64,000 nt of DNA from Andalucia godoyi And28 (taxonomy: Eukaryota > Protista > Jakobida), in NCBI GenBank assembly GCA_009859145.1, contig VRVR01000008.1:195494-259493 (forward strand), in the 5' to 3' direction. Made by a program: the position numbers and the translations under genes. Positions within the stretch are counted from its first letter, which is position 1, and the number at the start of each line of letters is the position of its first letter. Under the pieces are notes generated by a model. That model worked only from the letters and a program-made list of their open reading frames with translations, made no database searches and was not told where the DNA came from. This document shows, one piece after another, positions 15,204-42,146 of the stretch.

Positions 15204-15458
15204 TTTGAAGAACGTTGACACTAGATTGGCATCAATTGAGTCCTGATGTGGGAAACAAGGGGCAGTTCAAACGGACGTTGTTTTCTGCAAAATCCTATCT
15301 TTTTCTCAATGTCTCCTTTGTAATGAATGCACCTCTCCGTTTGTTGCTTATGCAATTACTTCTTCTTTTTGTTCTCCTTTTTTTTCTCTTCTCATTCGCC
15401 ACCATTATCATCTTGTTCTGCCCTTCTTGGTATTGTCATCTTGTCGGATCCAGGTACA

Positions 15459-16712
15459 ATGTCCAGCTTACCGCTGTCTGCCGAGGCCAATGGGTACTTG
15501 GAAGCGCATGACATCCGTCCTTTGATGGAACGGATGCTCCGGGAAGTGGTTGTGCACAAGCCGCAAGATCCGATTTCGTTCTTGATTGATCTTCTGCAGC
15601 ACCCTGAGTGCCCTCGAATCATTCTTTCATCGTCGCATCTTGCATCTCCTGTCACAAAAGCAGTCATCGACTTCATTGTGTCTTCCACAAGGGTGTTTCC
15701 TGTTTCACTGGATCAGATCGGAAAGAAGAATGCATCGGACGACCTTGCATTGATGGAATCGACTTCCAACTACATCAAGACGAACAAGGATTGCGCAAAG
15801 TCTGGCTGGCTCTTGATTGGGCTTCCCAAGAATCGAACGCAGGCGCTCAAGTTGCAGGCTCTTGGAGTCCTTCCGACGCATGTCATCAATCTGGATGTGG
15901 CAGGAGAGCAGTCTGTGGAGACACCCGAGGATAACGAAAATCGGAAACAGATGATTGCGTGTTACAAGCCGGAAAGTGTTCGCAATGTCAAGACTGACCA
16001 GAGCACAACCTCAAACAGCAGCGCTGCGGTATTTGAAGAAATCGCAACCTTCGTTCAAAAGCCAGTGAAGCCTCTGCGGACGCAAGGATTGGGAGTCATG
16101 ATTTCTGGTGCGCCTGCTTCTGGGAAGGGTACGCAGTGCGAGCGGATTGTTTCGGAATTCCAGCTGATTCACATCTCCACTGGTGACTTGCTTCGTGACA
16201 ACGTCAAGCGTGGAACCGAACTTGGCGCCAAGGCAAAAGCATTCATGGAAGCCGGCAAGCTGGTTCCCGACCAGATCATCATCGACCTTGTTTTGGATCG
16301 TTTAGCGCAAACCGATTGCAGAAATCAAGGATGGTTGCTGGACGGATTCCCAAGAACACGGAAACAGGCACTGGCTCTTTCTGCTGTTGGTGTATTGCCG
16401 GATCGTTTTGTGCAGCTGGACGTACCGGATTTCTTGCTGGTAGAACGAGTTACTGGTAGAAGGACGGATCCTGCTACTGGGAAGATCTATCACATGAAGT
16501 TCAGCCCTCCAGATTCCAAGGAAGTTGCCGCTAGACTAGTTCAGCGAGCAGATGATAACGAAGAAACGGTGCGCACTCGCCTTCAAGAGTATCACAAGAA
16601 CGCCAAAGAAGTGCTGGAAGAATATGCCGGTCTTGTAAAGCGCTTTGACGGTACTGGCGCTCCAGATGATGTATTCCTGCAAATCAAGGCATACATTCAA
16701 ACTGCAAAGTAG
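15459..16712 (+). CDS. Flagellar-type adenylate kinase with N-terminal Dpy-30/RIIa docking motif, AK8-like
   Basis: YLEAHDIRPLMERMLREVVVHKPQDPISFL docking motif, a degenerate first AK domain, and an intact second domain (GAPASGKGTQC, HISTGDLLR, GWLLDGFPRT, LVQRADD). Confidence 0.88.
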   Translation: MSSLPLSAEANGYLEAHDIRPLMERMLREVVVHKPQDPISFLIDLLQHPECPRIILSSSHLASPVTKAVIDFIVSSTRVFPVSLDQIGKKNASDDLALMESTSNYIKTNKDCAKSGWLLIGLPKNRTQALKLQALGVLPTHVINLDVAGEQSVETPEDNENRKQMIACYKPESVRNVKTDQSTTSNSSAAVFEEIATFVQKPVKPLRTQGLGVMISGAPASGKGTQCERIVSEFQLIHISTGDLLRDNVKRGTELGAKAKAFMEAGKLVPDQIIIDLVLDRLAQTDCRNQGWLLDGFPRTRKQALALSAVGVLPDRFVQLDVPDFLLVERVTGRRTDPATGKIYHMKFSPPDSKEVAARLVQRADDNEETVRTRLQEYHKNAKEVLEEYAGLVKRFDGTGAPDDVFLQIKAYIQTAK

Positions 16713-24069: not shown

Positions 24070-24453
24070 TTACTGCTGAGAAACGGCTGCAATGGCTTCG
24101 ATTTCAATGCGTGCATCCCGTGGGAGGCCGGCAACTGCAAACGTTGAACGAGCCGGACGATGCGTTCCAAATGCCTCCTCATAGAGCTTGTTAACCGCTG
24201 CAAAATCTGCCATGTCTCTCAGCAGCACAGTGGTTTTCAACACATGAGACATGCTCGATCCAGACGCTTCAAGCACAGCCTTCATATTCGCAAACACTTG
24301 CTTGGCCTGGACGTCGACCGTTGCCCCAACAAGCTGCATGGACTGCGGATCCAGTCCAATGACCCCAGACAAGTAAACAGTATTTCCGTGTTTCACCGCT
24401 TGCGAGTAAGGACCGATCGCAGCCGGTGCATTCGATGTTGACACAAGCTCCAT
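24070..24453 (-). CDS. RIDA: RidA/YjgF/UK114 reactive intermediate deaminase
   Basis: APAAIGPYSQAV, LSGVIGLDP, VLKTTVLLRDMADFAAVNKLY and RPARSTFAVAGLPRDARIEIEAIA. Confidence 0.95.
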   Translation of the reverse strand: MELVSTSNAPAAIGPYSQAVKHGNTVYLSGVIGLDPQSMQLVGATVDVQAKQVFANMKAVLEASGSSMSHVLKTTVLLRDMADFAAVNKLYEEAFGTHRPARSTFAVAGLPRDARIEIEAIAAVSQQ

Positions 24454-24949
24454 CTTGTTGTTGGTGCTCTCCCCTGTTCTTCTTTTCCTTCTTTGTCAGC
24501 AGTATCTGCGTGAAATCTCCATCGTCGCGCAGCACCTCAGCCCGCCAGCGGAACGACCGTCTTGCAGTCGAGTTGGGGGCCGCTTGCCTGCAATACCACA
24601 TCCCAAATCGACGCGTGGCGACTGCATTCCCTCGCTTGCACAAAAAGGATTCTACTGTTTTTGCACCGCTGAGCGACAAAGTCAACAGCCAAAGAAAATA
24701 AGGCGTTTGCTGCGTGTGTCGTTTTGATTCCTTGTCTTTCCACCCACGACACAGCTTGCAAACAAAAGTTTGGGACAATGTATCCTTCAGGTTACTTGGA
24801 ATAGAGCTCGTGTTTCCAGCGGTTTTCTTGTTTTTTGTTTGTTTGTTTTCTTATCACCGGTGCTGCTTTTGTGTGTTTTTGATTGTATTTGCCTTGTGCT
24901 TGTGTGGAGGGTGGTGGTGAAGCGGTGGTGTTTGGTGTTTTTTACGCAA

Positions 24950-25618
24950 ATGAGCAGCGATGTTGGATCGAATGTGAACGCGGATCCCTCGCTCCGGCGA
25001 GTCTCTGCACTTGCGCGACATCTTGCTCCTCGTGTTCTTTCTGTTTCTCAGGTGCTTCCTTCATTCCTGGAACACTTGCGGAGAGAAGCTGGGAGTGCTG
25101 CGCTTCCACGGCAGTCACCTCCTGAATTCACTCCTTCTCGGATTGCATACATCTCACCTCATGAATCGCTGTCTTCTGAAACTCTGCAGGCTGGCGTCGT
25201 TCTTGTTGCTCATCCGAGACCCGATGTTCGCAAAGCATTTATAGACCGTCTTTGTCAAGCTGCTGTGGAGAGATCTCTTTTGGTGTATGCAATCTCTCCA
25301 GAAGGATCAAACACAGTCTCTGTTCCGGGCGTTTTCCGACTGATGACGCATGCCACGCTGTCGCGACGCGCGATTCTGTCGGCGCTGCTGAGACACGGCG
25401 CGCATGTCCTTGTTTTCGGACTCGTTTCCACACGCGATGATGTGTCATTGCTGATGGAAGCAGCTTACACCGGCTATCACACTGTGGCTGAAGTGTTTGG
25501 TGAGTCCCCGCAAGATGTTCTGGCTAGGCTGGAGACGATCGGGGTGGATGCGACCATGCTTCCGAAGAGTCTCCGGGTCATTGTTCCAGTGCACGGAGAC
25601 CAGGACATGAAGGAGTAA
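24950..25618 (+). CDS. GspE/PilB-like secretion ATPase C-terminal domain homolog, catalytically degenerate
   Basis: Colinear with the PilB/GspE consensus: GVVLVAHP (GIILVTGP), VPGV (LPGI), ILSALLRHGAHVLVFG (LRAILRQDPDVIMVG), MEAAYTGY (QAALTGH), LARLETIGV...L..SL (ITRLLEMGV...L..SL). Walker A GKT and Walker B Glu are lost. Confidence 0.7.
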   Translation: MSSDVGSNVNADPSLRRVSALARHLAPRVLSVSQVLPSFLEHLRREAGSAALPRQSPPEFTPSRIAYISPHESLSSETLQAGVVLVAHPRPDVRKAFIDRLCQAAVERSLLVYAISPEGSNTVSVPGVFRLMTHATLSRRAILSALLRHGAHVLVFGLVSTRDDVSLLMEAAYTGYHTVAEVFGESPQDVLARLETIGVDATMLPKSLRVIVPVHGDQDMKE

Positions 25619-25677
25619 TAACCTCCCCGTGACGCAAAACGATTTTTACAAGTGCGCTTCTTCGAGATAACACGAGG

Positions 25678-28600
25678 TTACGCGAGACCGTAAGAACGGA
25701 GTTTTTCAACCGCGCTCTTGTACTTTTCTTTCAAATCAAAAATCTCGTTGAAGAAATCTACATCGAACGCTTCCAATTCTCTCCGCAGATCCTCATTTTC
25801 GGTTTGCAAACGTTGGGCCTCTGCAGTCGACGACTTTAAGGAGGCCTCCATTCTGGCAACACTCTCTTCCAGCGAATTTGACTTCTTGATCGACAGGTCC
25901 AACTGAGAACGGAGTGCTCCAATCTCAGCGACCGCTGCGGCGAGATCAGTTTGCGATGCTTCTGCGATACGCCCTTTATCTTGCCGCAGAGAATCCAGTT
26001 CTGCGGCAGCTTTTTCCAGCTTTGATCGCAAACCCAGTATTTCCGATTCGTTCGACACTTGTTTCTGACCGAACGTCGTAAGTTGTTCCTCCTTGAGAGT
26101 GAGCAGCCGTTGGAGCTTGACAACGTCCTCCTGTAGCTTTGCAGAAGAGAGTCTGTCATCAGTGCGTTGCTTCGCGATTTTGAGTGCCGACGCGGCTTTT
26201 TCCTCGGATTCTTTTAGCTGTCCTTCGAGCTCCAAGCATTTTTTCTTCCAGATCTTAACCTGAGATAAAATTTCCGTGTATTTGAGATTAGAAACAGAAT
26301 GCTGTTTCAATTCTTCGTTCTCCTTCTGCAACTTTTCGACAACCTTCTGCAATGCGACCACGACGTGTTGCATCTCGTGAGGGTCCCGTGATGAAAGAGA
26401 TCCATCGGCAATCCCAGACGCTTTGCTCGAAACCTTTTTCTTCGATTGCTGCGGTAACAAGTCCCGGATGGTGTCAGACAGACTTGGGTAGGCAGAAACA
26501 GTGGAACAAGATTGGACGAACATGTTGTTAAGAGCCTGCAGCTCCTGCACTCGCTGGCGGTACCTTTCGAGGCGCAAGGCGCCCGATTCCTTTTCTAGTC
26601 TTAACTGTAACAGCTCACCGTCAACTGTCAAGCGCAACGAATTGCCATCCGAATTGGGTAGAGCAGCTTCCGAAGTCGCGTGCTCCAAACGAATGTCCCT
26701 CATCCTGATTTCCTCTCTGAGTTTTGATTCCGATTCACGCAATATGAACAATTCCGACTTACACTGAGCTAGTTCTGCAAGAAGATCACCGCTGAAGACA
26801 TGAGTACTAGCCTTCTGCAATTCCGAACGAACCCGATCCAGTTCCGCCGAAGACTCCTTCAGTTTCTTCTCGAGCATGTCCACTTTCCCTTGCAATACCT
26901 CCGACTCCTTTTCTTTGTTGGAACACAACACAGAAGCGTCTTTCAGCTTCTGTTTGAAGCCATCTAGCTGTTTCTGGACTTTCTTCTCTTCCTCCCATCG
27001 AATCCGCGCCAGCAGACTGGCGTTTGGCTTGGAATCCGGCCCATTTGGGTTCTCCGCGAGGCCAGACACAGTATTCGGTCCGGATACTGAAGATGGGGAC
27101 GGCGCACGCACCGAAGCAGGAACAGAAGTAGGAACAGAAGCAGGAAAAGCCTCCATCGCTGCGACAGTCGTTAGCTGTTTTTTCAAATTGGTGACGTCTG
27201 ATTCCAAGGACGAAACACGCTTCTTCAAGTCCTCTCTTTCACGCAGGAGCTTGTCGTTCTCTTGCTTGACACTAATGTACTGAGCTTCCAATTTGCCGTT
27301 TTCGTCTCTTCCAGAAACATCACGTACTGGACGCGGTTCGACATTCGGTGGATCAACAGTCATATTTTGAGCCCCGGTTTCACGTAGTTCACGATTCTGA
27401 TTAGTGACAGCAGCTATCTCCATTGCCAGCTTCGCGTTTTCCTCAGAATACCGTTTGCAGGATTCCTCCAAGAGACGACAGCTAGCACACGCATCGTCTC
27501 GCTCTCGACGCAAAACATCCAGCTCTGCTTTGATCTTCTCCGTACGCTGCTGCAATGCCAAATATTTGTCGGAATCACCACGATTGGGCTGCGAATTTTG
27601 GGACGAAGATGAGACAGCGGCTTCCTTCCTCGCGGTTGCGGACGCCCTCGATGTTAGCATGCTCCGCTTGGCTTCGTCCTCCGCAACCATCACAATTTCC
27701 TTTCTCAGCTGATCCACCGCAGCTTGCAAATTCCTCAATTGCACATTCTTTTCATTCAGCTGCGATTTCAGTACTGACAGTTGTCTCTGCATTGTACGGG
27801 ATGGCATATCCTCGGAAACCTTCTTCAATTGTATTTCCACATCGCATAGCAGTCGATTCTTCTCTTCAAGAGCAGCACGGCATGTATGCAGTTCCTTACG
27901 CAATGTGTCTGCCTCCATCTGGAGCGAAGAAACCTTCTTATCGCGATCCATTAGCATGGCCTCCACTTCCTCGGGTGGAATACCGCGTGAAGGATTGAAG
28001 GCATCCGCGTTGTAAGGACGATCAATGACATTTGTGCCCGGACGATCCGCTGCCGCTCGAAGACGAGAAATAGACTCCTGAGATTCAATATGGACCTTCT
28101 CACAAAACTCCTCCATACGGGACTGCATTTCCTGACGCATGGACAAGTTGTTGTCCCTTTCCAGTTGCAACAGCTCTTGATACCGCAAAATCGCATCGTC
28201 TTTCTTTTGCATCTGCGCCTTCAGGCTTTCGATTGTCATTTGTGCAACGCGGACAACCTTGTGCGCGTCTTCTGCTGTTTCTCCTACAAGATCAGAGTCC
28301 TTTCCCGAGACACCGCCAGATTTGCCCCTTGTAAACTGAAGGATTTCGCGATCTCGTTCTTCCAAGCGTGCCTGAAGATCTGCCGACAACAATTCTGTTC
28401 GGATGAGCTTTTCCTGGATATCTTCAAGCTTCGTTTGCAACATGATGACTGAGGCATCTGCGACTCCGTCATGTGCGGCCGCGGTAGTCGTCGCCGGTCT
28501 CCCTCCGAGTCTTTCCAAAGACAGCGAAAGCTCATTTGATACCAATTCGCTGTGACGTATATCCACTTCCAGAAGCCTCTCTTCTAATTCTGATACTCGC

Positions 28601-31600
28601 TGCTTCAGATCACGGTTCTCTTCTTCCAATGTCGTCTCCACTGAAATCAACTCTTCTTCTGCAGTTCTGAGCGCTTCCGTCGTCTTCTCGAGTTTCATGG
28701 AAGAGAACTTCGCTTCATCTCGCAAAAATTCACATTCCCTGCGGAGCCGCACCTCAGATACTTTGGATTGGGAAAGATGGTCAGACACTTCGACAACCTT
28801 CCGGATAACATCTCGTGTGTCGGTTTTGGCGCTTAAAATCAATTGCAGTTCAGAGAGCGCATTGTACTTCACCGCCCATTCTTCGCATCGAGTGCGGGCT
28901 TCGTGCAGTTCCACTTTCAGCTTATCAAGATTCTCCACATTCTGTCCGTTTTCCAATTTCAACTCATCGTTTCGTCGATGCACGCTCTCCAACTCTATCC
29001 ACCATCTCTGAGAACGTATCGCAGGAGTCTGACCAGGTCGATTGAAAGACCCCGACCTACGAGAAGTTGAACTTGCAAGAGAAGACGCCGAAGAAGGAAC
29101 AAGAAACGCATCACGAAGATCCTGCTCGGCTCGCAGTCGCAAACGCCGCTCATCTCGTAAAGACTGCCGAACACGGAACAACTCGGCACTTTTCTCAGAG
29201 AGCAACTGGAGCAAACGACGCAACGAGGACGCTTGTTGCTGATTTTCAAGAGAAGCACTCTCGAGCTGTCTTGCATTGTCAATCTCAAGTTTCCGAAGCT
29301 GAATTATTTGCAGTTGCAATTTGCCGAGGATTGCTGACGATTCATCCCCAGACTTCGAAGTCTGCTGCAGCTGTCTTACGGTATCATTAAGAGCAACGAT
29401 TTCGATGTCGTACTGCGCACGAAGAGAGTCCAACTGGACAGACATCTGGGCACTCAACTGGGCTAGGTGTTTGTATGTGGCATTCTCTGACGACAGTTCC
29501 AGGATTTTCTTCTCAAGAAGTTCCGTTTTTCTTAAAAGCGCTGCACTTTCCTCTGCCGACAAGCATCCGTTCAACTTTTTCTCCAGCAGGGCCTCTCGTT
29601 CGGCAGTTTCCCGATGCTGCTGAGAGAGTCGAACAATTTGCGATTGCAGCTCCTGACACCTTCGGTCGCCAGCAACAACTTCTTCTCTAGATCGGCTCAA
29701 TCTTTCTTCCACAATTCTCACGTTTTCCTGTTGCTGAGCAAGCTGAACCTGCAAAGCCGTAACAACGGCAATCTGTTGGGGGCCGGAAGCACCAGCAGCA
29801 GCAGCGGCATTGGTGGAAACGCTGGACATCTTCTCCATTGACTGCATGTACCTATCTGCACGTTCTTTCTCTGCGCGAAGCTGCACTCGCAAATCTTCAG
29901 CCTCTTTTTCGGATTTCTTCACGATCAGCACTAAATCATCAATTCGCACTTTCGCATCAAGAAGTTCCGCTTCCTGAGCAGCGGATGTGGCTTGCGATCG
30001 CATCAAGTAGTCTCTTTCAATTCGACATTCTTCGTATTGCAATCTTGGAACACTGCTCTCGATCTGCTTTTCCATTACGACTCCGCGCGCTTCAGTGCTG
30101 TGGAATATTTCCTCCAAAAACACGATTCTCTCTTTCATTTTTCCTTGCTGCTCGGTAAACTTGTGCTTCAGCGAGAGCAACTCCCTTGTCAAGCTCTGGA
30201 ACGATTCGTTCATGTGCACGAACCGCTTCGACATGACGTTTTCGTTGACTTTTAGCAGCGTGATTTTTCGAGACATCTCAGCTATTTTTCGAGTCGTCTC
30301 ATCGGGATTCTTCGACGCATCTTCCAGAAGCACGCACATGTTCTCAAACTCAGAGCTCTTCACTTTGGCAGCCTCAAGAGCCAGCTGCAACTCAAAAATC
30401 TCTCCGGACATCGACTGGAGTCTTTCATCCGTGAGATTCGTAAGATCGCTTATCGCCTGGTCCTTCATGTGAATCAGCTTCTGTAGCCTGGACACCTCGG
30501 ATTCGTATTCTTCGACCTTGGTATGAACGGAAAACAACTCACGTTGCACATCATCAGCCAAAGAGTACTTCTCCCTGTTCTTCAGCGCGGAGAGCTCACG
30601 CGCGGCCGACACCGCAGATTCGACAGCAATTGCAACACCACCGGACTCTATGTTGGAAACAGAACGGCGAAGCTCATGGTTATCCTGCGAGAGCCTTTCC
30701 AGTTGAGCATTCGTCCTGTCTAACATTATCTTCAGTTCGCGGAATTCGTCTTCATTGTGAGATGCCGAAAGATCGGGCAATGAACCATCTCCAGAGCGGG
30801 CGTCTGACATTCGATTCTGCAATGGGGTTCCAGACACGGAGCTTCTGTCCGTCTGATAAGCTGAAACCTTTCTGCTAGACCGAGATTCCGATTTCAGTTC
30901 AGAGACCTTATCAAGAATCGTTCGAAGATTTCGATTTTCCTCTTCCAACTTCGTGATGCGGGACTGGTACTCAACGTCAATATCACGACTGACAACATCC
31001 GGAGGCTGTGATTCTTGCCGGCGAGAAGAAGACTTTGCAAGAACAGCAAGCTGGTTCATTTCTGATTCAACCAACTTCTCATGATCTCGAACAGACATTT
31101 CGTTGGCCTTCTTCAAAAACCCACGAATCCCACTGAGATTACCGTCTCGCATCGCATCTGCCAGATTGTCTAGCAACATAATTTGGTCGCCAGAGAGACC
31201 CAGTTTGACGGCGCGGGACCCAGACTCCCACGCTCGATCTCGTGCGACCGATTTCCAATGCAAAAGCTCTTCATTTGTTCGTTCGATCTCATGCTCCAGT
31301 TGGGATTTTAGAGCCCGCAGTCTTTCAACTTCTATCTGATTTCGTGCTTTGAGCACTTCAGGCTTGAGATCGCTGTCAGGAACATTATACTTGACACGCA
31401 GAACGTGCAATTGCTCGGCGAATTCCTCCAAATCGACTTCCCGAAGATTAAGTTGGGTAGTCAGTTGCGAGATGTCCCGATCGCGGAACACCATCTGACG
31501 TTCTAATTCTCGTATCTCTTCTTGAGCTTCGGTCATGCCATAAATTCCTTTCTCGAACCGGGTCAACTTCTGATTGAGATTTGTCAACCGTTCATCTTTC

Positions 31601-33122
31601 TCTGCTAATTCTTTGTTCAGTCGGTCAATTCTCTTCCTTTCAATCTCAAGATCAACTTTCAGATGAGCAGCCTCTTTCTGGAATTCGGATTGTGCAGCCA
31701 ACGACAAAGACGGTTTTCTTCTCGGGCTCTCGCGTTTGGTGCCGGATCTCTCCATAGTCATCGATGAATTCGGAGAGAGAGACGACGTGCGGATTTGTGC
31801 GTACGCCTGTTCAAGCTCGGCATTCTTCTCGGCCAGCACTCGATCCAGTTGCTCTAATCGAGTGTCGACTTTTGCAGAATGAGACCGTGCATCCTCTTCT
31901 TTAAACCGCACCAATTCCTCACGAAGCTTCGATATCAAGTCCTCTTTTTCCTTCAACTCTTTCTCGTGCATGTCAACGATGGTATGAGCCTCACTGGAGT
32001 ACTGGTCCACTGCTAAGACCAGCTTTTGCTCAGCAGTCTGCAACCTCTTTTCTAGCGACATTGTGCTTTGGATTAACGCAGCTTTGTCCGCTTCAAGATC
32101 CTCAATGCGCTTTTCTGCATCTTGAGCCAACAGCTTCCGCTCCCTGACTTCTTCGGTCAGCCTATCAGCCCGCTCTTCGAAATCGATCAAAGACTGTTGC
32201 ATTGATCGTATTTGCGATTCCAGATCGTTCTTTGACGCTGACAACGCATTGATCTCCTTGAGATACTTGTCAATCTGCTTGTTCTTCAAAGCAAATTGTG
32301 ACTTGATATCCTGTGCTTTCTGCGCTTCCGAGTCGCGAAGGATCCTTATTTTCGCCTCTTGATCTCGAAAAGCAGCAAGCTCTTCTTTCAGGTCAGAACA
32401 CTGCTTGTCTAACTCCAACAGGTCGTGCTTTCGCTTTTCGCTCTGATCCTGGAACTCTCTGTTCGAATTCCTTAGTTGCATGATGGTGGCATCCTTTTCA
32501 GTGCATTCGGCTTCGAGCTTAGCTTTGGATTCCTTCAATTCTTCCAATGCTTGATGAAAATTAGCGTTTCCCTCGTAGTTATCATGCGCCTCTCGCAATC
32601 GAGTAAGTTCTGTTTTCATTGCCGCGACCTCAGAAGTAAGATCTTTGTTCTCCTCTAACTGGCCCTCGAGGTCGAGTGATTTCAACCTAACAGAAAAACA
32701 ACATTAGTTGCGACACAGAAAAATGGACGATAATTAAGCCCGGTGGAAAATAACATACTCTGCTACAAGTTGCGAGACTCGGAACAACTGGATCAGATTC
32801 TCTTTTGTCACCAGATGGGAAGCAGGATCCACATAAGACGATACGATGGGCAGATACAAGTCATCCAGCTCGTCAACGACGCCCTCACCCTGTAAAAACA
32901 AACATGAAACACGTTAATTAGAAGCTCACAATTCACATGTCGCGTATTACACATCATGTGCCACACACTTCACATATCATTCTTGAAGACGAAGCGAATA
33001 TAAAAGCACCATACTCTCAAAAATCGATCCACATCGACGTCAAGGATCCTTTTCCAGTTAAGCCGATTGTCTTTTCGTGTAAACGTGTAATCTACACCTC
33101 CTTCACCTTCTTCGTCGGCCAT
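25678..33122 (-). CDS. CEP290: Centrosomal/transition-zone protein CEP290; exons 33122-33015, 32889-32759, 32686-25678
   Basis: Two GT-AG introns (33014-32890 and 32758-32687) join in frame. N-terminal NWKRILDVDVD and ENLIQLFRVSQ match the CEP290 N-terminus. FEKGIYGMTEA and RIRWEEEKKVQK blocks lie in a coiled coil of about 2400 aa. Confidence 0.88.
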
Positions 33123-34061: not shown

Positions 34062-37000
34062 TTATGACAAGCAATGCTCGATGCATGCACGTGCGAAGCC
34101 TTCTGCAATATATTCCACGAACATTTTGTCGGTTTCAGTGAATGGAAAATGCTGATGCCCTACTCGCGCACGCTTATAAATACCTGGCTTGATGTTGCTG
34201 GACACCAGAGAAGGAGAATCGGAAAAATTTGTGGCAAAAAACACATTAGACTGTGTTGGGTGGCGAATGATGCAAACAGACACATCGTCGAAAACAGTTA
34301 TAAACCCTCCAAATTCGTTGGTCACACTTTTTAGAAGCGAGTGGGTGACACTCGTGTCCATAAGTTGGGTAAGCGACTCGTCGATGGATTCAAGGGCAGT
34401 CCTTTCTGCCTTTGTGCAAAGCATCATTAGCCCATCAATTCCCAAAGAACCTGCGGATAATGCCTCCCATAAACCATCTAAAACCCGATGTTCCTCTGCA
34501 ATCGAAATGGCTTCTGCAAACTGAACTTGCAAATTGTTTTCAATCGTTCGAACTGTCGCACGTAGCAGAGCTTCCGCTTTCTCCGGTGCTATATCTACCT
34601 GTGGAGTGTACTCTTTGATCGATGCGACCACCAGAATCAGCAAATCCAAATGAAGAAGAGAATTCGTAGCCATGGGCTCTCCAGCGCCCTTGCTTTCCGC
34701 TGGTTCGGAACAACTGGCGACGACAGCACACGAGTCTTGGACAAACAACAAGCAATCCCCAACACTCTGAAGACCGTAACGATCCGAATTCTCCAACAGA
34801 TACGAAAAGAACTCTTGGCCGCCAGTCTGTCCTTTCAACGGCATAGATATTCGTGTCGTTGTGATGCCGTTGCGGGCATAGCGTGGGACAATTCCAGAAT
34901 AGAAATCGAGCATTCGGCGAAGGCAATCCACACAATCAAAAAGCGGTAGAGCAGGATCGGGACGGAGGAGCTGTTCTTCAAAAAGACGGACTTGGAAATC
35001 ATACGCGAACGATCGCAAGTGCAATGCTCTTATTAGCCGGCTCAGCTTGTCAGAGAAGTCGGTTGCACTTGGAGAAATTGACGAAATCGGATGTCTGACG
35101 AAAACATTGACGAAAATGTCGGAAGCACGAAACCCCAGCTCAATGAAGCAGCATCCTTGGTCTGGGAACACTTGATAAAAGTACGCAGCGTTCGGAATCA
35201 GAGATACTGAAACAAGGCCAACGGGGCTCCGCAAACTGATGCACGTCGATCCTTGGTATGCGTCCGGATGGCCGAAATAGTGTGGAGAGCTGCAGACAAA
35301 CGGAGAAAACCCGAGATGCTGTTGTATGTACGCCGAATATCGGGCGATAAATCGATCCAAAACGTTTCTGTGGAGTAAAACAGTCCTTCGCACACGCAAG
35401 TACTCATCTTCATCGAAATGAATTCCGACGAATTTATCCAAGCGCTCTTCATCCAAGTGCACCACGCGAGTGCCAGAGGCCACGCGTCCTTGTGTGAACA
35501 ATGGAGAACGAAAGCATGCAGTTGGCACAGACTGTTGCAAGCCGAACCGAAGCAATTCCCAATCGGAAGATAACGAACTTTTTTGCATACGAGACTCCAT
35601 GGATTCCATTCCTGAAAATAATAACTGCAACTGACGGATGTGATGCTCGTTGCCCCCTTCAATCGCACTCGGAGAGCAAAACCTTCCATCAAGCACTTCG
35701 AATATAGACCTATTCATTTGACTTATCTGATCCGGGCTGATTGCCAAAGAAAACCCCGGGTTCATGACTCGTGCAACAGACGGGGGTGTGGCCGACTGCC
35801 ACAGCAGTAGTGATTGACCGACAGAAAAACTTGCATCAGAAGAAGACATGCATGATATGACATTTCGCGTGCTGGAATGTTTCTTCAATCCTATCTTTGC
35901 ATGGACAACAGAATGAATAACATGAGATCGACAAACCGACCAAACAGAAATAGAACACAGAGAGTGCCAGAAAGAATCGAAAAGCGATGCTGAGCAATGA
36001 AACCCGTGCAATTCAATTGCACTGGGACGAAGACACACAAACAGGAATCCAGATTGCTGATGTCGCTTTGATTCCATGACTTCAAAAACCAAGAAACGAC
36101 AATCTGCAGCAGGATCGCAGATTTCGTCCAAGTTCGAAAGATGCCGCGCGACCGTTGCGAGACAGCGAAAGCGAAATCCGAGCGATGATGCAAATTGACA
36201 GACATTGACACAGCAGCCAGCCATGCTCGACGGTGGCAAAAATGAATCCATCTTCGAAAACGAAACCGTACTGCACTGTACATCAACAGCAAAATCGAGG
36301 ACGTACTTCAGTTTCATGAAATGGTCGTGAGACAAAGTATCAGAATCGAATGATTCGACGAAGCGCCGAATCACCGCTCTGATAAGAGCATGTTGGACGA
36401 CTACGAGTAAGGACACAAGGATACCTTTGTGATCAAAGTCCCCGGCAGAGAGAACGTCAGCACGAAGAATTCGGGAATCATTTGGGAACCCCGCATAGGA
36501 ATCAACGAAACGCGCCATATGCAGCTTTCGAAGATCTGCAAATTCCAAAACCTCCTTGAAATCGAAATCCGTTGTTTGTGAATCGAGCTTGCTAGGATAG
36601 ACCACTTCGTTTCCCGTCGAAACACAGGGATGTATGTAAATCAGAGCAAGACCCTTGGAAGAAGGCATGGGGATTTTTGCAGGAATGGCGGATGAACGAT
36701 AAGACGGTTGATCAACACCATTCAAGAGAAAGGTGAAATCTTGAAAAACAAACGGAACGCCATTCACATAGTAACTATCGACAACAGGAATGCAAAGCAA
36801 ATCAGCCCCGTTATACCCATTAATCGGCTGGAACGACCGAGATAACAGCTCCTGTCTCAAAATTGAAAAGAAATCCTGCAGAGGATGAAGGAACTGAGGA
36901 AGCAACACGAATGACGTCGAGTCCTTTCGAGAAGGATGGTTTCGCAGAAAATCGAGATCGTTTTGTTGCATTTTCAAGTTGGGATTTCGAGCAATTAGAG

Positions 37001-40000
37001 TAGACAAACTCGATAGAGCCATGCTTGCGATCTTGCTCACCACAAGATCGTGAAGTTTGTATGTGATGTCTGTGGACGGAGGATCAATACCAAAAACCAA
37101 AAGCAGAAGACTGGAATCAGACTCCGCCAGTGAATTGTCTCTGCGAAACTTTGTAGAATCATGGGCCTTCGACAAACAAAGACGCATGTAGAAGATATGG
37201 CCAAAAGAATCTCTGTATACAAAAAGATTCTTGCGATTGGAAACAGAAAATGCAAGGAATATCGAAGAAATGAGATTCTGGACAGCTAACTGAGAAAAAG
37301 ACAAACGAAATGGCACAACGAACGACAGAGAATGCACAAGCGGGCAACGAAACATTCCAGGGTGATGAGATGGCGGAACAGCAAAGAAAGTTTGGATCGC
37401 TTGCTCGCTTGCAATGTCGTCGTCATAGAAGGATCGGTCAACGGAGAATGCATCTTCATCATCAGAAACGATATCGAATTTGCTGGGAGGAAGGAGTAAA
37501 TCCGAGCAAAGGCGAGAGTCATGCAACTGTGACAGCAAGATCAGCTGGTTCGAGCGATGATTCAAGGATCCAATCCAGTAACAAATGTTATCCAACAGTT
37601 CCGAAACCAAAACGTGCCCAGGAGAGATCCGAGGATGGAATATTGAAATACGAACAGTGCTGAAATGAACTTGGATAAAGCACCAGAAAGAGCTAAAATC
37701 TGAAGAAGCATCTGCAGCTGAAAATATTGAGGAGCTGCGGGAAACGTCCCCGTGATTCTTGACGTCCATGACCACATAAACTTCGTCGACTTTCACCAAC
37801 GTCAGCATGTCAAACTTCTCCAACTCTTCGAAAAACAGAGAGCGGCCCTCCGCTGCATCGACAAAAGTGAGAGGTTGATCCAACTCCACTTTCAATTCTG
37901 CGGGTAACGTGGAGAGAAAACTCCGCACCTGATCAAGTAAAGATCGCGTCAGCTGTTTTCGCAAAAGCAGTCCTGCAAGAACTTGGCGGGAAAATAGTGC
38001 GAATATTCGCTTTGACACCGAAGTCGTTGAAGTCGTCCATCCATCGCTCCATTGGGAGTTGTTATTATGTCGCGTAGCCTCCACATCAGAAGTCAAAAAC
38101 GAATGAAACGCTTGTTGCCTACATTCCAAAGAAGACGATGCATTCAGAAAGCATTTCAGTACTTCATCGAGAGTCCTGTAGACAGTAATCGCCTCGATCT
38201 GGAACCGGATACTACGATCTCCCGACAGAACATCCTGAAATGGGGAGAGCGGCATCCCTGGGAGCACAAGAATTTCCTTCAGCGGCTCCTCACCAGAAGC
38301 AAAGAGCGAGAATCTGAGAAAGTATGGGGATGTCAGCAACTCACTACTCGGCATTTCGGTCTCAATGCCAGCGGCATGAGGAACCCAAATCTGCGGACTG
38401 GTGGAGCATTGGAAAAAGAGAGAAGAAACCGCAGAGAACAGTTCACGCTCCGTTTCCGTATGTGACAAGGGGCTGTAAGCTCCTGCAGGATCCGAAAGAT
38501 TACTACATATCCTGAAATACTCTGATACGTCGAAAGACGTTGAAAAACTGGGCAAAGTCGAAATGACTCGATCAACGACATCGCTTGTAAGGCCAATCCC
38601 ATGTTGAAGAGCACGGCAGGCCACAAGAGACCGGAATGCTGTCACAAGTGAAGTCAAACGCGACAGAAAAGCATCTCGCAGGAGAATTTCTTCTGAAGAG
38701 AGATACTGTGTGGGATCGTGACAATGAAAAACAGACATTGTTCCTACTGTCTCAAAAGCATTATTCAAATTTTCTGCGCCGCTTGAAGACCGTAGATCTG
38801 CATCCACTGTCCAGACACCCTCAGTTGTGGAAAGAGAAATGCCCTGCAACACAACAGACGAAATCGCGGCTGATGGAAGACCGTGCGCTGCCACACTCAC
38901 AAACGGAACCACCAATATCAGAAAGTACGAGGAAGAAATGACCACAGCAAAACACTGGAATGCACCCCGGCCGCAAGCAGTAAACAACGAAGCTCGAGAC
39001 AAATTGATCCTATCTGCAGCAACAGCACTGAGGGTACGTCCGAATGGGGATGTAGAATGTTCAACTTGTGGGCACAGCAAAAAGACGTTGTCATCCTCGT
39101 CATCCGACGTCAAAATGCTGACATCGGCGCAGACCGAAAGCACCGAGGAGAGGAAAGCGACTATGGCATTGTTCAGCGCAACGCAGCACGCAGTAATATC
39201 TGCGTTCACAAGGGCATTATACGCGCCGCGAGTTACAACGGGAATGGACAACATCTCAAACCTCAATTCGGTCAAATTGTATGGAAGGCAAATTGTTTTC
39301 AGCGAAAATTCCAAACCCATCAACTTCGAGAATGCGAGACTCTGGTATCGAGAATGTCGTCCTGACGGCTCTTGTTGAGCCAGACGACTCTGTAACTTTG
39401 ATACGCTCTTCTTGAAAGACCCGTCAGCCGACTTGTCAATAACATACAGATAGCTGTAAAATGCTGTTAAAATATTCTGTAAAATAGACGAAAATTTGGA
39501 ACAAACGACGTCCCAGAGTACTTCTGTGGAACCACATTCAAAGCCAAGATTGAGCACCGCTGGGATTTCCCATTCCCCTGTAAAAGAGTCCATCCACAAA
39601 TCAATGCCGAACGATCCAGATTTTGAAAAATACACCGCCACGAACAGGAAAAGAAACCGATTATCTTCCTCGTGACCTTTGTTCGTTTGAAACTCAAAGA
39701 CGAAAACGCTAGAGTTGCGATCTTCAAACAGAAGATGCCCACCCCGGCTTGACAAGTACCCAACAAAAGTATCAAACAGAGTTTGCCACAATCCTGAGTG
39801 GCTTAGTGCCCACCGAAAATGGGCCTGCCTCATAATACTGGCCACACAAAGGGACCGGAGAGAGAACCAGGACGGAACAGCGCGAGCAACGTTTCCCGGC
39901 CGAGAGTGAACAGCAATCGAAGTCTGGCGATCGACTCTGTTTTTGTTCATTGCTCGCAACACCAACGAAATCCTCGGGTGGTGTATAATCGTGAAACGAA

Positions 40001-42146
40001 AATTGCGATCCGCAGAAACACGGAGAAGATCCAAAAAAGAAGAACGAAGGTAAACACGGTCCGTCGCATTCACAGAAAAATAAAGAAAGCGAAGACGAAT
40101 TAAGTTGCTCTCGGACTCCTTTTGAACGTACAGCATCGCTGAGGAAGCGGTGCGCGACTGATCGAGCCGTTCAAACTCCCCATCATCCTGAGCGCTGACA
40201 TCGGCGGCCGGCGACGCATGCACGGAAGCACTGTTCTTCCGCTCCGCCCAGACAAAAACAGCGTCAGACGAAAACGAAGCGCCCCATGATCGCGACGCCA
40301 TAAGAACAATATTAAAAGCACGCGCAAACACAACTTCTTTGGTCACCGAGATCACCCCCGCGGAGTCGGAAAGCATGGCGTAGGGAACGAGAATCTCTAA
40401 TTCTTCCACAGAAAAGTGCCGTTCCAGCTCTCGCACAGATAGCTCGCCAAGACGGCACACAAACTCAACATCAGAACTCGCCTCGGCTTTCAGCTCCGGC
40501 ACTGTATGCTTTGAGTGGCCCGAAACGCCTTGATTGGAAACAGCAAACCCTCTGGAAAGAGGGTCAGAAACATCCCTACCTCGCAATCCTTCGCCGTTAA
40601 CAATGCTCTGAAAAAGACGATGGATGTAGAGAAAAACTGCGTCAGATTCCTGTAAGGCAGAAAAGAAACCCTTAACGGCCGGATTTGTGTGCGAAAATGT
40701 AAGAGACTCCAAGGTAGAAGAAACAAGCGCAACGATTTCAACATAGCACCTCCGTGGTGCCTGCTTCTTGGCTCGTTTCCTGACATTCCGAGATGGCAGC
40801 GCTGCAAGCTCTTCTTCGCGTTTCTTGAACTTCTTTTCATCAGCAAAAACTTTTGCATTTCTGTCATGCAACGAGACTCGATATACGACTGTCACAAACG
40901 AAGAGAACAGAAATTGAAGTTCAAGCTCCACAAGACGACGATCCGCATCCTCTCCAGACGGCCCATCATACACAAAACGCGACGGCAAAAATCCGTCTCG
41001 TAAACGTCGATCCAGAAAAGAAATGAGGGGACAATACGGAACATCATACGTCACAGACTGAAGATCATAGGGATAAAGGCTCGTAGATTGATTTGTCATG
41101 GGATTGCAATCTCCTAAACCAAAAAGAGAGGACGTGACATGCAACATATGTTGCCAAGCTTGCAACCGTGGAAGTCTGTAGCCGGGTAAGACATCATCTC
41201 GACAATCGTTCAGATCAACAATTGTTCCGCATTCAACGTCATACAAGCCAATCCCTCCAACCGTTTTTGAAGCAACAGAAGTAATTTCATCCCAGTTAGG
41301 AGGCAGCTTGGAAGCACAGCGTGAACCGATGATCAAAAACCACGACGACGCATCAAACCTCCTCATGGCCGTACATGCGCAAATCAAAGGGCTTGAAAGA
41401 CCAGTCGAGCCAAAGAGCATGCCATCTGTTATACAGATGTGAATGGGGGCGGCGTCGGATTCGGAGAACTCAAGCATGAACAGAGAATTTTCTAGCACAT
41501 CTTCCACTGCTGAACCATCAGTGCCATGCTCATGCACATTATTCTGGGAAACGCAGGACGTTTCCACATCCTTAAGACGCTCGCGAATTTGCGAAAGAAG
41601 AAAATCCCGCGAAGACTCCGTCAGTTCGTGCTCTTCAAGCAACAAGCAAATGCGGCGAGAAGATGACAGACTTGCGATGACCGATACAGAAAGAGAGGGG
41701 CGAGAAGATGAAAAGTAAGGATATCGCAGATCAAGTAAATGACGAAATACTGCCTCTACGGCTCCAACATACGAGTCTGCAAGGATGCTGCCGCTTGAAA
41801 CATCAAAAACCCATGTTGACGCGCTCATGTCCAGCGACAACAGGAATGAGTAACGAGCATAACACACGACGACCTCAGAGGATGGCACGAGCAAGGCCTC
41901 TTTCAATGACAATTCCTTGGAAACAGAAATCGGGTCATTTGACAGAAAACCTACTGACACAGGAAATTGTCCAAAAGATTGCAACCGGGTGCTGTCCTCA
42001 GCTATCCACAAGCGAGAATTGCAAAATTCCGAAAACCAAAAGTATCGGTCCAACAGTGAAAATATGTGGTGATCCCTGCTCCACAAAAGCACGGTTCTTG
42101 CAGTTGGAAGATGGTTTCCGTACGCATCTACTGCAAGCACGGACAT
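34062..42146 (-). CDS. SZT2: SZT2-like protein (KICSTOR scaffold)
   Basis: First ATG at 42146. LLVPSSEVVVCYARYSFLLSLDMSASTWVFDVSSGSIL matches the SZT2 N-terminal block, and LNHRSNQLILLSQLHDSRLCSDLLLP and FSVSNRKNLFVYRDSFGHIFYMRL match the central blocks. Confidence 0.82.
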   Translation of the reverse strand: MSVLAVDAYGNHLPTARTVLLWSRDHHIFSLLDRYFWFSEFCNSRLWIAEDSTRLQSFGQFPVSVGFLSNDPISVSKELSLKEALLVPSSEVVVCYARYSFLLSLDMSASTWVFDVSSGSILADSYVGAVEAVFRHLLDLRYPYFSSSRPSLSVSVIASLSSSRRICLLLEEHELTESSRDFLLSQIRERLKDVETSCVSQNNVHEHGTDGSAVEDVLENSLFMLEFSESDAAPIHICITDGMLFGSTGLSSPLICACTAMRRFDASSWFLIIGSRCASKLPPNWDEITSVASKTVGGIGLYDVECGTIVDLNDCRDDVLPGYRLPRLQAWQHMLHVTSSLFGLGDCNPMTNQSTSLYPYDLQSVTYDVPYCPLISFLDRRLRDGFLPSRFVYDGPSGEDADRRLVELELQFLFSSFVTVVYRVSLHDRNAKVFADEKKFKKREEELAALPSRNVRKRAKKQAPRRCYVEIVALVSSTLESLTFSHTNPAVKGFFSALQESDAVFLYIHRLFQSIVNGEGLRGRDVSDPLSRGFAVSNQGVSGHSKHTVPELKAEASSDVEFVCRLGELSVRELERHFSVEELEILVPYAMLSDSAGVISVTKEVVFARAFNIVLMASRSWGASFSSDAVFVWAERKNSASVHASPAADVSAQDDGEFERLDQSRTASSAMLYVQKESESNLIRLRFLYFSVNATDRVYLRSSFLDLLRVSADRNFRFTIIHHPRISLVLRAMNKNRVDRQTSIAVHSRPGNVARAVPSWFSLRSLCVASIMRQAHFRWALSHSGLWQTLFDTFVGYLSSRGGHLLFEDRNSSVFVFEFQTNKGHEEDNRFLFLFVAVYFSKSGSFGIDLWMDSFTGEWEIPAVLNLGFECGSTEVLWDVVCSKFSSILQNILTAFYSYLYVIDKSADGSFKKSVSKLQSRLAQQEPSGRHSRYQSLAFSKLMGLEFSLKTICLPYNLTELRFEMLSIPVVTRGAYNALVNADITACCVALNNAIVAFLSSVLSVCADVSILTSDDEDDNVFLLCPQVEHSTSPFGRTLSAVAADRINLSRASLFTACGRGAFQCFAVVISSSYFLILVVPFVSVAAHGLPSAAISSVVLQGISLSTTEGVWTVDADLRSSSGAENLNNAFETVGTMSVFHCHDPTQYLSSEEILLRDAFLSRLTSLVTAFRSLVACRALQHGIGLTSDVVDRVISTLPSFSTSFDVSEYFRICSNLSDPAGAYSPLSHTETERELFSAVSSLFFQCSTSPQIWVPHAAGIETEMPSSELLTSPYFLRFSLFASGEEPLKEILVLPGMPLSPFQDVLSGDRSIRFQIEAITVYRTLDEVLKCFLNASSSLECRQQAFHSFLTSDVEATRHNNNSQWSDGWTTSTTSVSKRIFALFSRQVLAGLLLRKQLTRSLLDQVRSFLSTLPAELKVELDQPLTFVDAAEGRSLFFEELEKFDMLTLVKVDEVYVVMDVKNHGDVSRSSSIFSAADASSDFSSFWCFIQVHFSTVRISIFHPRISPGHVLVSELLDNICYWIGSLNHRSNQLILLSQLHDSRLCSDLLLPPSKFDIVSDDEDAFSVDRSFYDDDIASEQAIQTFFAVPPSHHPGMFRCPLVHSLSFVVPFRLSFSQLAVQNLISSIFLAFSVSNRKNLFVYRDSFGHIFYMRLCLSKAHDSTKFRRDNSLAESDSSLLLLVFGIDPPSTDITYKLHDLVVSKIASMALSSLSTLIARNPNLKMQQNDLDFLRNHPSRKDSTSFVLLPQFLHPLQDFFSILRQELLSRSFQPINGYNGADLLCIPVVDSYYVNGVPFVFQDFTFLLNGVDQPSYRSSAIPAKIPMPSSKGLALIYIHPCVSTGNEVVYPSKLDSQTTDFDFKEVLEFADLRKLHMARFVDSYAGFPNDSRILRADVLSAGDFDHKGILVSLLVVVQHALIRAVIRRFVESFDSDTLSHDHFMKLKYVLDFAVDVQCSTVSFSKMDSFLPPSSMAGCCVNVCQFASSLGFRFRCLATVARHLSNLDEICDPAADCRFLVFEVMESKRHQQSGFLFVCLRPSAIELHGFHCSASLFDSFWHSLCSISVWSVCRSHVIHSVVHAKIGLKKHSSTRNVISCMSSSDASFSVGQSLLLWQSATPPSVARVMNPGFSLAISPDQISQMNRSIFEVLDGRFCSPSAIEGGNEHHIRQLQLLFSGMESMESRMQKSSLSSDWELLRFGLQQSVPTACFRSPLFTQGRVASGTRVVHLDEERLDKFVGIHFDEDEYLRVRRTVLLHRNVLDRFIARYSAYIQQHLGFSPFVCSSPHYFGHPDAYQGSTCISLRSPVGLVSVSLIPNAAYFYQVFPDQGCCFIELGFRASDIFVNVFVRHPISSISPSATDFSDKLSRLIRALHLRSFAYDFQVRLFEEQLLRPDPALPLFDCVDCLRRMLDFYSGIVPRYARNGITTTRISMPLKGQTGGQEFFSYLLENSDRYGLQSVGDCLLFVQDSCAVVASCSEPAESKGAGEPMATNSLLHLDLLILVVASIKEYTPQVDIAPEKAEALLRATVRTIENNLQVQFAEAISIAEEHRVLDGLWEALSAGSLGIDGLMMLCTKAERTALESIDESLTQLMDTSVTHSLLKSVTNEFGGFITVFDDVSVCIIRHPTQSNVFFATNFSDSPSLVSSNIKPGIYKRARVGHQHFPFTETDKMFVEYIAEGFARACIEHCLS

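What the first reader, a model, noticed from the sequence alone, without database searches (positions are those of the whole stretch)
24950..25618. Eukaryotic nuclear gene for a catalytically dead bacterial type II secretion/type IV pilus ATPase domain
Seen: a 222-aa intronless ORF among typical eukaryotic genes, colinear with the GspE/PilB ATPase core but with Walker A (AHPRPDVRK) and Walker B (VFGL instead of VGE) destroyed. Known: a T2SS-derived mitochondrial system with split and divergent GspE homologs has been described in jakobids, heteroloboseans, malawimonads and hemimastigotes. Inference: this is either one of those divergent GspE-like components or an additional unrecognised one, and it hints at the host lineage.
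Basis: partly seen in the sequence, partly recalled or inferred. Interest (0 to 1): 0.72.

Follow-up and report, generated by a model that had tools for sequence, protein, structure and literature searches.

The report
Known dead secretion-ATPase gene of a jakobid
The ORF is real but already published: it is GspEL of the protist Andalucia godoyi, a catalytically dead copy of the bacterial secretion ATPase GspE from the mitochondrial secretion system, and the only possibly new point is a peroxisome-type targeting motif at its start that five other families of that system share.

Summary
Window 24950-25618 (+) is an intronless 222-aa ORF among ordinary eukaryotic genes. It matches Pfam T2SSE above the curated cut-off, and its model folds like PilB/PilF/GspE. 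It lacks Walker A, the Asp box, the Walker B glutamate and both His-box histidines.

It is not new. The protein is identical, residue for residue, to "GspEL, Andalucia godoyi, KAF0852954.1" in Supplementary Data 1 of Horváthová et al. 2021 (PMC8134430). That paper describes GspEL as a divergent C1E-domain homologue of GspE with these motifs abrogated.

The most likely role is a conserved non-catalytic GspE paralogue that partners or regulates the active GspE/GspEN2A motor. This is inferred, not shown.

One thing looks unreported. Residues 17-25 (RVSALARHL) fit the peroxisomal PTS2 consensus. A PTS2-like nonapeptide lies near the N-terminus of 46 of 52 GspE, GspEL, GspEN2A, GspEN2B, GspF and GspG sequences, against 3-4% expected by chance. 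The system also co-occurs with three WD40 proteins that the paper relates to the PTS2 receptor Pex7. I could not reproduce that Pex7 affinity.

The parts
24950..25618 (+). GspEL coding sequence (222 aa plus stop), intronless; identical to A. godoyi KAF0852954.1
24998..25024 (+). aa 17-25, RVSALARHL: N-terminal nonapeptide that fits the canonical PTS2 consensus [RK]-[LVI]-x5-[HQ]-[LAF] with Leu at position 5. It lies in a predicted helix (aa 13-25) and is followed by A-P
25187..25588 (+). aa 80-213: RecA-like core equivalent to the C1E (nucleotide-binding) subdomain of GspE/PilB. It ends just before the point where bacterial proteins carry the tetracysteine CM subdomain
25208..25234 (+). aa 87-95, AHPRPDVRK: degenerate Walker A. 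All three glycines are lost, and the P-loop Lys position holds Arg94, which is invariant in the family
25289..25315 (+). aa 114-122, AISPEGSNT: degenerate Asp box. The acidic residues of EDPVE are not conserved in the family
25403..25423 (+). aa 152-158, HVLVFGL: degenerate Walker B. Gly157 is kept, and the catalytic Glu is replaced by Leu158 (Thr/Val/Ile/Ala/Gln in relatives)
25469..25498 (+). aa 174-183, TGYHTVAEVF: degenerate His box. The first His is replaced by the invariant Tyr176, the second by Phe183
24454..24949 (.). 496-bp divergent intergenic region between the RidA/L-PSP gene (24070-24453, minus strand) and GspEL, with a T-rich tract just upstream of the ATG. Presumed promoter and 5' UTR; not tested

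Best explanation
The ORF is the nuclear gene for GspEL of the jakobid Andalucia godoyi. GspEL is a stand-alone copy of the nucleotide-binding (C1E) subdomain of the bacterial T2SS/T4P assembly ATPase GspE that keeps the RecA-like fold but has lost every catalytic motif. It belongs to the gene set that always co-occurs with the mitochondrial T2SS-derived system (miT2SS) in jakobids, heteroloboseans, malawimonads and hemimastigotes. Shown here: its identity, fold, motif loss, strong conservation and eukaryotic genomic context. Inferred: it acts as a non-catalytic (pseudo-ATPase) subunit or regulator. The published proposal is that it pairs with the divergent N2E-like protein GspEN2B to form an inactive GspE-like protomer, which joins or controls the active GspE/GspEN2A hexamer on the GspF platform. 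Also inferred: its N-terminal PTS2-like helix (aa 17-25) is the element that directs or docks it.
For: Identity: the sequence is identical over all 222 residues to GspEL KAF0852954.1 in Suppl. Data 1 of PMC8134430. A. godoyi has a compact, about 20 Mb, mostly intronless genome (PMC7050145), which fits the window. Fold: Pfam T2SSE above cut-off; hhalign 98.8% against bacterial ATPases; Foldseek top hits PilB, PilF, GspE and BfpD. Motif loss; the substitutions are shared by all relatives. Selection: 54 invariant columns among 22 family members. The A. godoyi protein is 48-57% identical to heterolobosean members, similar to the 53-58% seen for the active GspE. That level of conservation argues against a decaying gene. 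The family is sharply delimited. Among 1.84 billion representative proteins, 14 score E<=2e-10 and the next hit is at 5e-6. The named relatives are all heteroloboseans. The published description and the GspEN2B-pairing proposal are, and the 2023 review repeats the regulator idea.
Against: No experiment addresses GspEL function. In N. gruberi proteomics GspEL fell in the putative peroxisomal cluster rather than the mitochondrial one. Targeting predictions for the A. godoyi protein disagree: TargetP 1.1 gives mitochondrial at 0.79, while TargetP 2.0 and MitoFates are negative. Pairing with GspEN2B and entry into a hexamer are untested. I could not model complexes with these tools. The invariant Arg at the P-loop Lys position leaves open some residual phosphate or nucleotide binding.
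Confidence: 0.85

Rival explanations
1. GspEL works mainly outside the mitochondrial motor. Its N-terminal PTS2-type signal sends it, wholly or partly, to peroxisomes through Pex7, where it acts in the proposed mitochondrion-to-peroxisome branch of the pathway.
For: RVSALARHL (aa 17-25) fits the canonical PTS2 motif and sits within the first 40 residues. [quoted passage not shown] The species with miT2SS also keep Pex7 itself.
Against: The same motif is present in GspE, GspEN2A/B, GspF and GspG. Those proteins were found in the mitochondrial proteome or localised to mitochondria. The authors say the peroxisomal fraction was contaminated with mitochondrial proteins. A dead ATPase domain has no obvious solo role in peroxisomes.
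Confidence: 0.2
2. GspEL still binds nucleotide or phosphate through a non-canonical pocket (for example the invariant Arg94) and acts as a sensor or allosteric subunit rather than an inert scaffold.
For: An invariant Arg occupies the Walker A Lys position, followed by a basic residue. The RecA-like core is modelled with high confidence.
Against: All three P-loop glycines, the Asp-box acids, the Walker B Glu and both His-box histidines are gone. In the model the helix starts three residues earlier than it would in a canonical P-loop.
Confidence: 0.15
3. The ORF is bacterial contamination or a recent isolated horizontal transfer.
For: The domain is of bacterial type.
Against: It sits between eukaryotic genes on both sides on a 424-kb contig. 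The best bacterial-type hits reach only about 42 bits, against more than 250 bits for the complete family members. An orthologue at 74% identity keeps the same neighbouring gene in a separate assembly.
Confidence: 0.01
4. The ORF is a decaying pseudogene of GspE.
For: All catalytic motifs are lost.
Against: The reading frame is intact. The same substitutions are fixed across four deep eukaryotic lineages, there are 54 invariant columns, and the protein was detected by proteomics in N. gruberi.
Confidence: 0.01

Closest known systems
GspEL (GspE-like) of the mitochondrial T2SS-derived system, Horváthová et al. 2021, Nat Commun 12:2947 (PMC8134430)
   Same: This is the same protein: the sequence equals the published A. 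godoyi GspEL (KAF0852954.1). It has the C1E-only architecture, abrogated Walker A, Asp box and Walker B, and orthologues in Reclinomonas, Malawimonas, Gefionella, Naegleria, Neovahlkampfia, Pharyngomonas, Hemimastix and Spironema.
   Different: Nothing differs in the gene. Two points are additions to the texts I could search: both His-box histidines are also lost, and an N-terminal PTS2-like nonapeptide is shared with five other Gsp families.
Bacterial GspE/PilB/PilF assembly ATPases (Pfam PF00437; e.g. PDB 4KSR, 1P9R, 5TSG, 5IT5)
   Same: The RecA-like C1E fold is shared. The sequence is collinear from the Walker A strand to the helix after the His box, and the LSxxAIL-ALLRH...G...TG...RL-xxG signature is conserved.
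   Different: GspEL has no N1E or N2E domains and no CM zinc subdomain or C2E. All catalytic motifs are replaced. It carries a eukaryote-specific N-terminal extension.
Eukaryotic (mitochondrial) GspE
   Same: It has the same bacterial ancestry, the same taxa, and the same N-terminal R-[LIV]-x5-[HQ]-[LIVM]-x-P motif.
   Different: GspE keeps GPTGSGKS, the Walker B GE and the C-terminal Cys motif. By profile comparison GspEL is nearer to bacterial ATPases (score 125) than to eukaryotic GspE (score 74).
Catalytically inactive paralogous subunits in ATPase rings (for example the non-catalytic subunits of F/V-type ATPases)
   Same: This is the analogy the authors proposed: active and inactive RecA-like subunits mixed in one ring.
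   Different: No evidence yet shows that GspEL enters a ring. It is a truncated single subdomain rather than a full-length subunit.
PTS2 peroxisomal targeting signal and its receptor Pex7
   Same: The nonapeptide fits [RK]-[LVI]-x5-[HQ]-[LAF], has a hydrophobic residue at position 5, lies near the N-terminus and is predicted helical.
   Different: Most carriers were found in mitochondria. About half of the family motifs have I, V or M at position 9 or M at position 2, and a conserved Pro follows two residues later. Recognition by Pex7 or by Gcp1-3 is untested.

Membership tests
GspEL (miT2SS-associated GspE-like protein) | Orthology to the published GspEL sequences | tested here: met
   100% identical to A. 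godoyi GspEL KAF0852954.1. It is 47-74% identical by BLASTP local alignment to the other full-length family members, or 48-73% in the 22-sequence alignment.
GspEL (miT2SS-associated GspE-like protein) | Homologous to the C1E nucleotide-binding subdomain of GspE only | tested here: met
   The Pfam, hhalign and Foldseek matches cover aa about 83-212. The protein ends before the tetracysteine CM region. No N1E or N2E match was found.
GspEL (miT2SS-associated GspE-like protein) | Walker A, Asp box and Walker B abrogated | tested here: met
   The replacements are HPRPDVRK, SPEGSNT and VFGL, and they are conserved across the family.
GspEL (miT2SS-associated GspE-like protein) | Occurs in a genome that also encodes GspD, GspE, GspF and GspG | not testable with these tools
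   No other Gsp gene lies in the 64-kb window. The paper lists A. godoyi GspD, GspE, GspF and GspG elsewhere in the genome.
Functional T2SS/T4P assembly ATPase (GspE/PilB, PF00437) | Walker A GxxxxGK[ST] | tested here: not met
   aa 88-95 read HPRPDVRK, with no glycines and Arg in place of Lys.
Functional T2SS/T4P assembly ATPase (GspE/PilB, PF00437) | Asp box, the Walker B catalytic Glu and the His-box histidines | tested here: not met
   The Walker B Glu is replaced by Leu158 and the two His-box histidines by Tyr176 and Phe183. The Asp-box acids are not conserved.
Functional T2SS/T4P assembly ATPase (GspE/PilB, PF00437) | RecA-like C-terminal domain fold | tested here: met
   The AF2 core has pLDDT 83-92. 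The Foldseek top hits are PilB, PilF and GspE.
Functional T2SS/T4P assembly ATPase (GspE/PilB, PF00437) | Hexamer formation | not testable with these tools
   No multimer prediction or experiment was available.
PTS2-bearing protein | [RK]-[LVI]-x5-[HQ]-[LAF] within about the first 40 residues, with a hydrophobic residue at position 5 (definition from PMC7710942) | tested here: met
   RVSALARHL at aa 17-25.
PTS2-bearing protein | Recognised by Pex7 and imported into peroxisomes | not testable with these tools
   The only indirect evidence is that NgGspEL fell in the putative peroxisomal proteome cluster.

The most novel reading that the evidence does not exclude
The N-terminal nonapeptide R-[LIVM]-x-x-[LIV]-x-x-[HQ]-[LIVMAF], usually followed by x-P, is a dedicated PTS2-derived signal of the miT2SS. 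It is shared by the six matrix and inner-membrane-side families: GspE, GspEL, GspEN2A, GspEN2B, GspF and GspG. It would be read by Pex7 or by the co-occurring WD40 proteins Gcp1-3, which the 2021 paper relates to Pex7. That would explain how heterolobosean Gsp proteins without a recognisable presequence are targeted or assembled, and what Gcp1-3 do. That the motif is shared is well supported: 46 of 52 sequences against a 3-4% background, 0 of 26 bacterial ATPases, 1 of 16 GspD and GspDN3 sequences. The receptor link is only a hypothesis. I found no mention of it in the 2021 paper, its supplement as held, the 2023 review or the searchable library.
Probability: 0.3. Interest if true: 0.75.

Novelty: already known. 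Interest (0 to 1): 0.3.

Why it matters
The gene itself adds nothing new. It is the published A. godoyi GspEL, so the value of this check is to close the finding and name the source organism. The shared PTS2-like N-terminal motif, if it holds up, would matter more. The function of the miT2SS, the import route of its heterolobosean components and the role of the Gcp1-3 WD40 proteins are all open questions. A short, mutable signal present on six component families turns them into simple binding and localisation experiments.

Tried and rejected
1. Physical clustering of miT2SS genes. The A. godoyi accession numbers for GspDL, GspEL, GspF and GspG are close together. However, all 27 A. godoyi Gsp/Gcp accessions fall in KAF0852xxx-KAF0853xxx, and the genome paper characterised only 864 candidate mitochondrial-protein genes. 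I take it that only this curated set was annotated, so accession proximity says nothing about linkage. No other Gsp gene lies in the window. Peptides from six unassigned window ORFs are absent from the paper's tables.

2. A family profile searched against PDB sequences was weaker than the single sequence: E 0.01, and only the Walker B to His box stretch aligned. The Walker A correspondence therefore rests on collinearity, the MAFFT alignment and the predicted strand-loop-helix, not on a significant local alignment.

3. GspEL as a recent offshoot of eukaryotic GspE is not supported. The profile score to bacterial ATPases (125) exceeds the score to eukaryotic GspE (74). No tree was built.

4. 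An independent check of the Pex7 affinity of Gcp1-3 failed. A. godoyi Gcp1 and N. gruberi Gcp2 searched against PDB sequences return generic WD40 proteins (WDR24, HAT2/RBBP4/CAF1-p55, Sec31, WDR5), and Pex7 is not among the best 60. The Pex7 link therefore rests on the published tree alone.

5. Gcp8 has no such motif, and Gcp9 and Gcp10 show only partial resemblance.

6. The two giant neighbouring ORFs have no Pfam match.

Full report
**Observation**

Window 24950-25618 (+) holds an uninterrupted 222-codon ORF. The frame is open upstream to 24770 but has no earlier ATG. The product matches Pfam PF00437 (T2SSE) at 28.3 bits, E 8.8e-7, above the curated cut-off of 24.9. The best solved-structure sequence match is Thermus PilF.

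The flanks are ordinary eukaryotic genes. They include a Na+/H+ exchanger, topoisomerase III, Cep57, a BRE1-like protein, adenylate kinase, an ankyrin-repeat protein and RidA, then Pus10, Rrp5, C2CD5, a kinase, an EF-hand protein and SBDS. Nearly all are single long ORFs.

**Identity**

A search of 5.8 billion proteins returned 27 relatives. Every one that carries a name is from a heterolobosean (Naegleria gruberi, N. fowleri, N. lovaniensis, Willaertia, Acrasis), at 54-68% local identity. Two unnamed sequences reach 72% and 74%.

Horváthová et al. 2021 (PMC8134430) describe "GspEL" as a divergent homologue of the C1E nucleotide-binding domain of GspE. They report Walker A, the Asp box and Walker B as abrogated. 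Their Supplementary Data 1 prints "GspEL, Andalucia godoyi, KAF0852954.1" with exactly the 222-residue sequence of this ORF.

The window is therefore from the nuclear genome of the jakobid A. godoyi. That genome is about 20 Mb, compact and mostly intronless (PMC7050145). The gene is already published and named.

**Fold and motifs**

An AlphaFold2 model built on 22 family members has mean pLDDT 72.5, with 83-92 over residues 81-210. It shows alternating strands and helices. Foldseek against the PDB ranks PilB, PilF, GspE/EpsE and BfpD first, at E about 2e-7 to 1e-6, about 125 aligned columns and rmsd 2.3-3.0 Å.

A profile-profile comparison with eight bacterial-type ATPases gives 98.8% probability, E 6e-17, over 105 columns. 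A MAFFT alignment with those ATPases and with eukaryotic GspE is collinear from the Walker A strand to the helix after the His box.

| Motif | Canonical form | GspEL residues | Change |
|---|---|---|---|
| Walker A | GPTGSGK[ST] | HPRPDVRK, aa 88-95 | Three glycines lost; Lys replaced by Arg94, invariant in the family |
| Asp box | EDPVE | SPEGSNT | Acidic residues not conserved |
| Walker B | GE | GL, aa 157-158 | Catalytic Glu replaced by Leu158 |
| His box | TGH...H | TGY...F, aa 174-183 | Both histidines lost |

The protein stops just before the point where bacterial proteins carry the tetracysteine CM subdomain. Coordinates were checked.

[quoted passage not shown] The loss of both His-box histidines is a small addition.

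**Conservation and limits of the family**

Among 22 members, 54 columns are invariant. The A. godoyi protein is 48-57% identical to heterolobosean members. The active GspE shows a similar 53-58% across the same span. The dead paralogue is therefore under selection comparable to the live one.

A profile search of 1.84 billion representative proteins found 14 at E<=2e-10. The next hit is at 5e-6. Eight of these weaker hits were read and are bacterial-type ATPases with intact catalytic motifs, and all of them align only over roughly the second half of the core.

By profile score GspEL is nearer to bacterial ATPases (125) than to eukaryotic GspE (74). That does not look like a recent duplication of the eukaryotic GspE. 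I built no tree.

An orthologue at 74% identity on a 3.3-kb contig from run SRR28285705 keeps the same convergent neighbour, the orthologue of the 2335-aa coiled-coil protein.

**Mechanism**

Shown: the RecA-like fold is retained, every catalytic motif is lost, and purifying selection is strong.

Inferred: GspEL is a non-catalytic subunit or regulator. The authors propose that GspEL pairs with GspEN2B to form an inactive GspE-like unit. That unit may mix with active GspE/GspEN2A in a ring. The 2023 review repeats the regulator idea.

Against a simple mitochondrial picture, NgGspEL fell in the putative peroxisomal proteome cluster. Targeting predictors also disagree for the A. godoyi protein.

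**A motif noticed on the way**

All GspEL N-termini share a short motif, LRRVSALARHLAP in this window. An HMM built only from the N-termini of seven eukaryotic GspE proteins ranks GspEL members above 2,004 decoys, and always hits near their N-terminus.

Reading the supplement showed the same element in GspEN2A, GspEN2B, GspF and GspG. It fits the PTS2 peroxisomal signal, defined as [RK]-[LVI]-x5-[HQ]-[LAF] with a hydrophobic residue at position 5 within about 40 residues of the N-terminus (PMC7710942). The window's RVSALARHL (aa 17-25) is a canonical match and lies in a predicted helix.

Counts over the first 80 residues:

| Set | Canonical motif | Relaxed motif (M allowed at position 2; I/V/M at position 9) |
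|---|---|---|
| GspE, GspEL, GspEN2A, GspEN2B, GspF, GspG | 26 of 52 | 46 of 52 |
| Shuffled versions of the same N-termini | 1.3% | 2.6% |
| Other proteins of this window | 2.5% | 4% |
| GspD | 0 of 9 | 1 of 9 |
| GspDN3 | 0 of 7 | 0 of 7 |
| Bacterial-type ATPases | 0 of 26 | 0 of 26 |
| Database GspEL members with an N-terminal region | 13 of 24 | 17 of 24 |

GspDN2 matches the pattern in 4 of 5 sequences, but inside its folded domain. Sequences within a family are not independent. The stronger argument is that six families with unrelated N-terminal extensions each conserve the motif.

The miT2SS co-occurs with three WD40 proteins, Gcp1-3, which the paper's tree places next to the PTS2 receptor Pex7. 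The same species also keep Pex7 itself. This suggests that Pex7 or Gcp1-3 read the motif.

I found no mention of this in the paper, its supplement as held, the review or the library.

Three cautions apply:
- Gcp1 and Gcp2 searched against PDB sequences give generic WD40 hits with no Pex7 among the best 60.
- Most carriers of the motif are experimentally mitochondrial.
- The motif could simply be a conserved part of a presequence.

**Verdict**

The gene is already known. The PTS2-like signal is a lead worth testing, but it is separate from the finding.

Noticed in passing
window 24998-25024 (aa 17-25 of GspEL); also the GspE, GspEN2A, GspEN2B, GspF and GspG sequences in Suppl. Data 1 of PMC8134430: A PTS2-like nonapeptide, R-[LIVM]-x-x-[LIV]-x-x-[HQ]-[LIVMAF] and often x-P after it, lies near the N-terminus of 46 of 52 sequences from six miT2SS families. 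The chance background is 3-4%. It is absent from the GspD and GspDN3 N-termini apart from one relaxed-pattern hit in 16, and from all 26 bacterial ATPases. The 2021 paper relates the co-occurring WD40 proteins Gcp1-3 to the PTS2 receptor Pex7. I found no report of this motif in the searchable literature.
   Followed up: partly
GspDN2 sequences in the supplement to PMC8134430 (for example Reclinomonas RLVAFLRHF, Malawimonas KLVAFLKHF): GspDN2 also matches the canonical PTS2 pattern in 4 of 5 sequences, but at positions 28-48 inside its conserved Secretin_N-like half-domain. The A. godoyi protein does not match. This may be a coincidence of an amphipathic helix.
   Followed up: no
Gcp9 and Gcp10 sequences in the supplement to PMC8134430: Gcp9 N-termini carry '...[IL][VM]FP[RK][VIL]' (for example Malawimonas RRISRIVFPHV, Naegleria VMNIMFPRVI), and A. 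godoyi Gcp10 has YRLLQILRP. Both resemble the tail of the shared motif but lack the H/Q-L pair. Gcp8 has nothing similar.
   Followed up: no
window 24950-25618 compared with alignments A2 and A3: By profile-profile score the GspEL core is closer to bacterial PilB/GspE-type ATPases (score 125, E 6e-17) than to the eukaryotic GspE of the same organisms (score 74, E 6e-10). Eukaryotic GspE has itself replaced the first His-box histidine (SGV...H).
   Followed up: partly
L001 (Logan SRR28285705, 3281 bp) versus window 24950-27600: An unnamed relative has a 74%-identical GspEL followed by the convergent orthologue of the 2335-aa coiled-coil gene. The local gene order is therefore conserved in what is probably another Andalucia-like jakobid.
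   Followed up: partly
window 25678-32685 (-) and 34062-42281 (-): Two giant intronless ORFs of 2335 aa (coiled-coil-rich) and 2739 aa have no Pfam family at E<=0.001. The first ends 59 bp from the GspEL stop codon, in convergent orientation.
   Followed up: partly
window 24070-24453 (-): A RidA/L-PSP (YjgF-family) gene is transcribed divergently from GspEL across a 496-bp spacer that ends in a T-rich tract just before the GspEL ATG.
   Followed up: no
window 15327-16712 (+): An adenylate kinase has its ADK domain only in residues 259-434, preceded by a roughly 258-aa N-terminal extension with no Pfam match.
   Followed up: no
P0013 (N. gruberi database model, 265 aa): The public N. gruberi GspEL model lacks the N-terminal motif. 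The paper's corrected sequence, repaired from raw reads, restores RRLTSLLSHL. Database gene models understate how often the motif occurs.
   Followed up: partly
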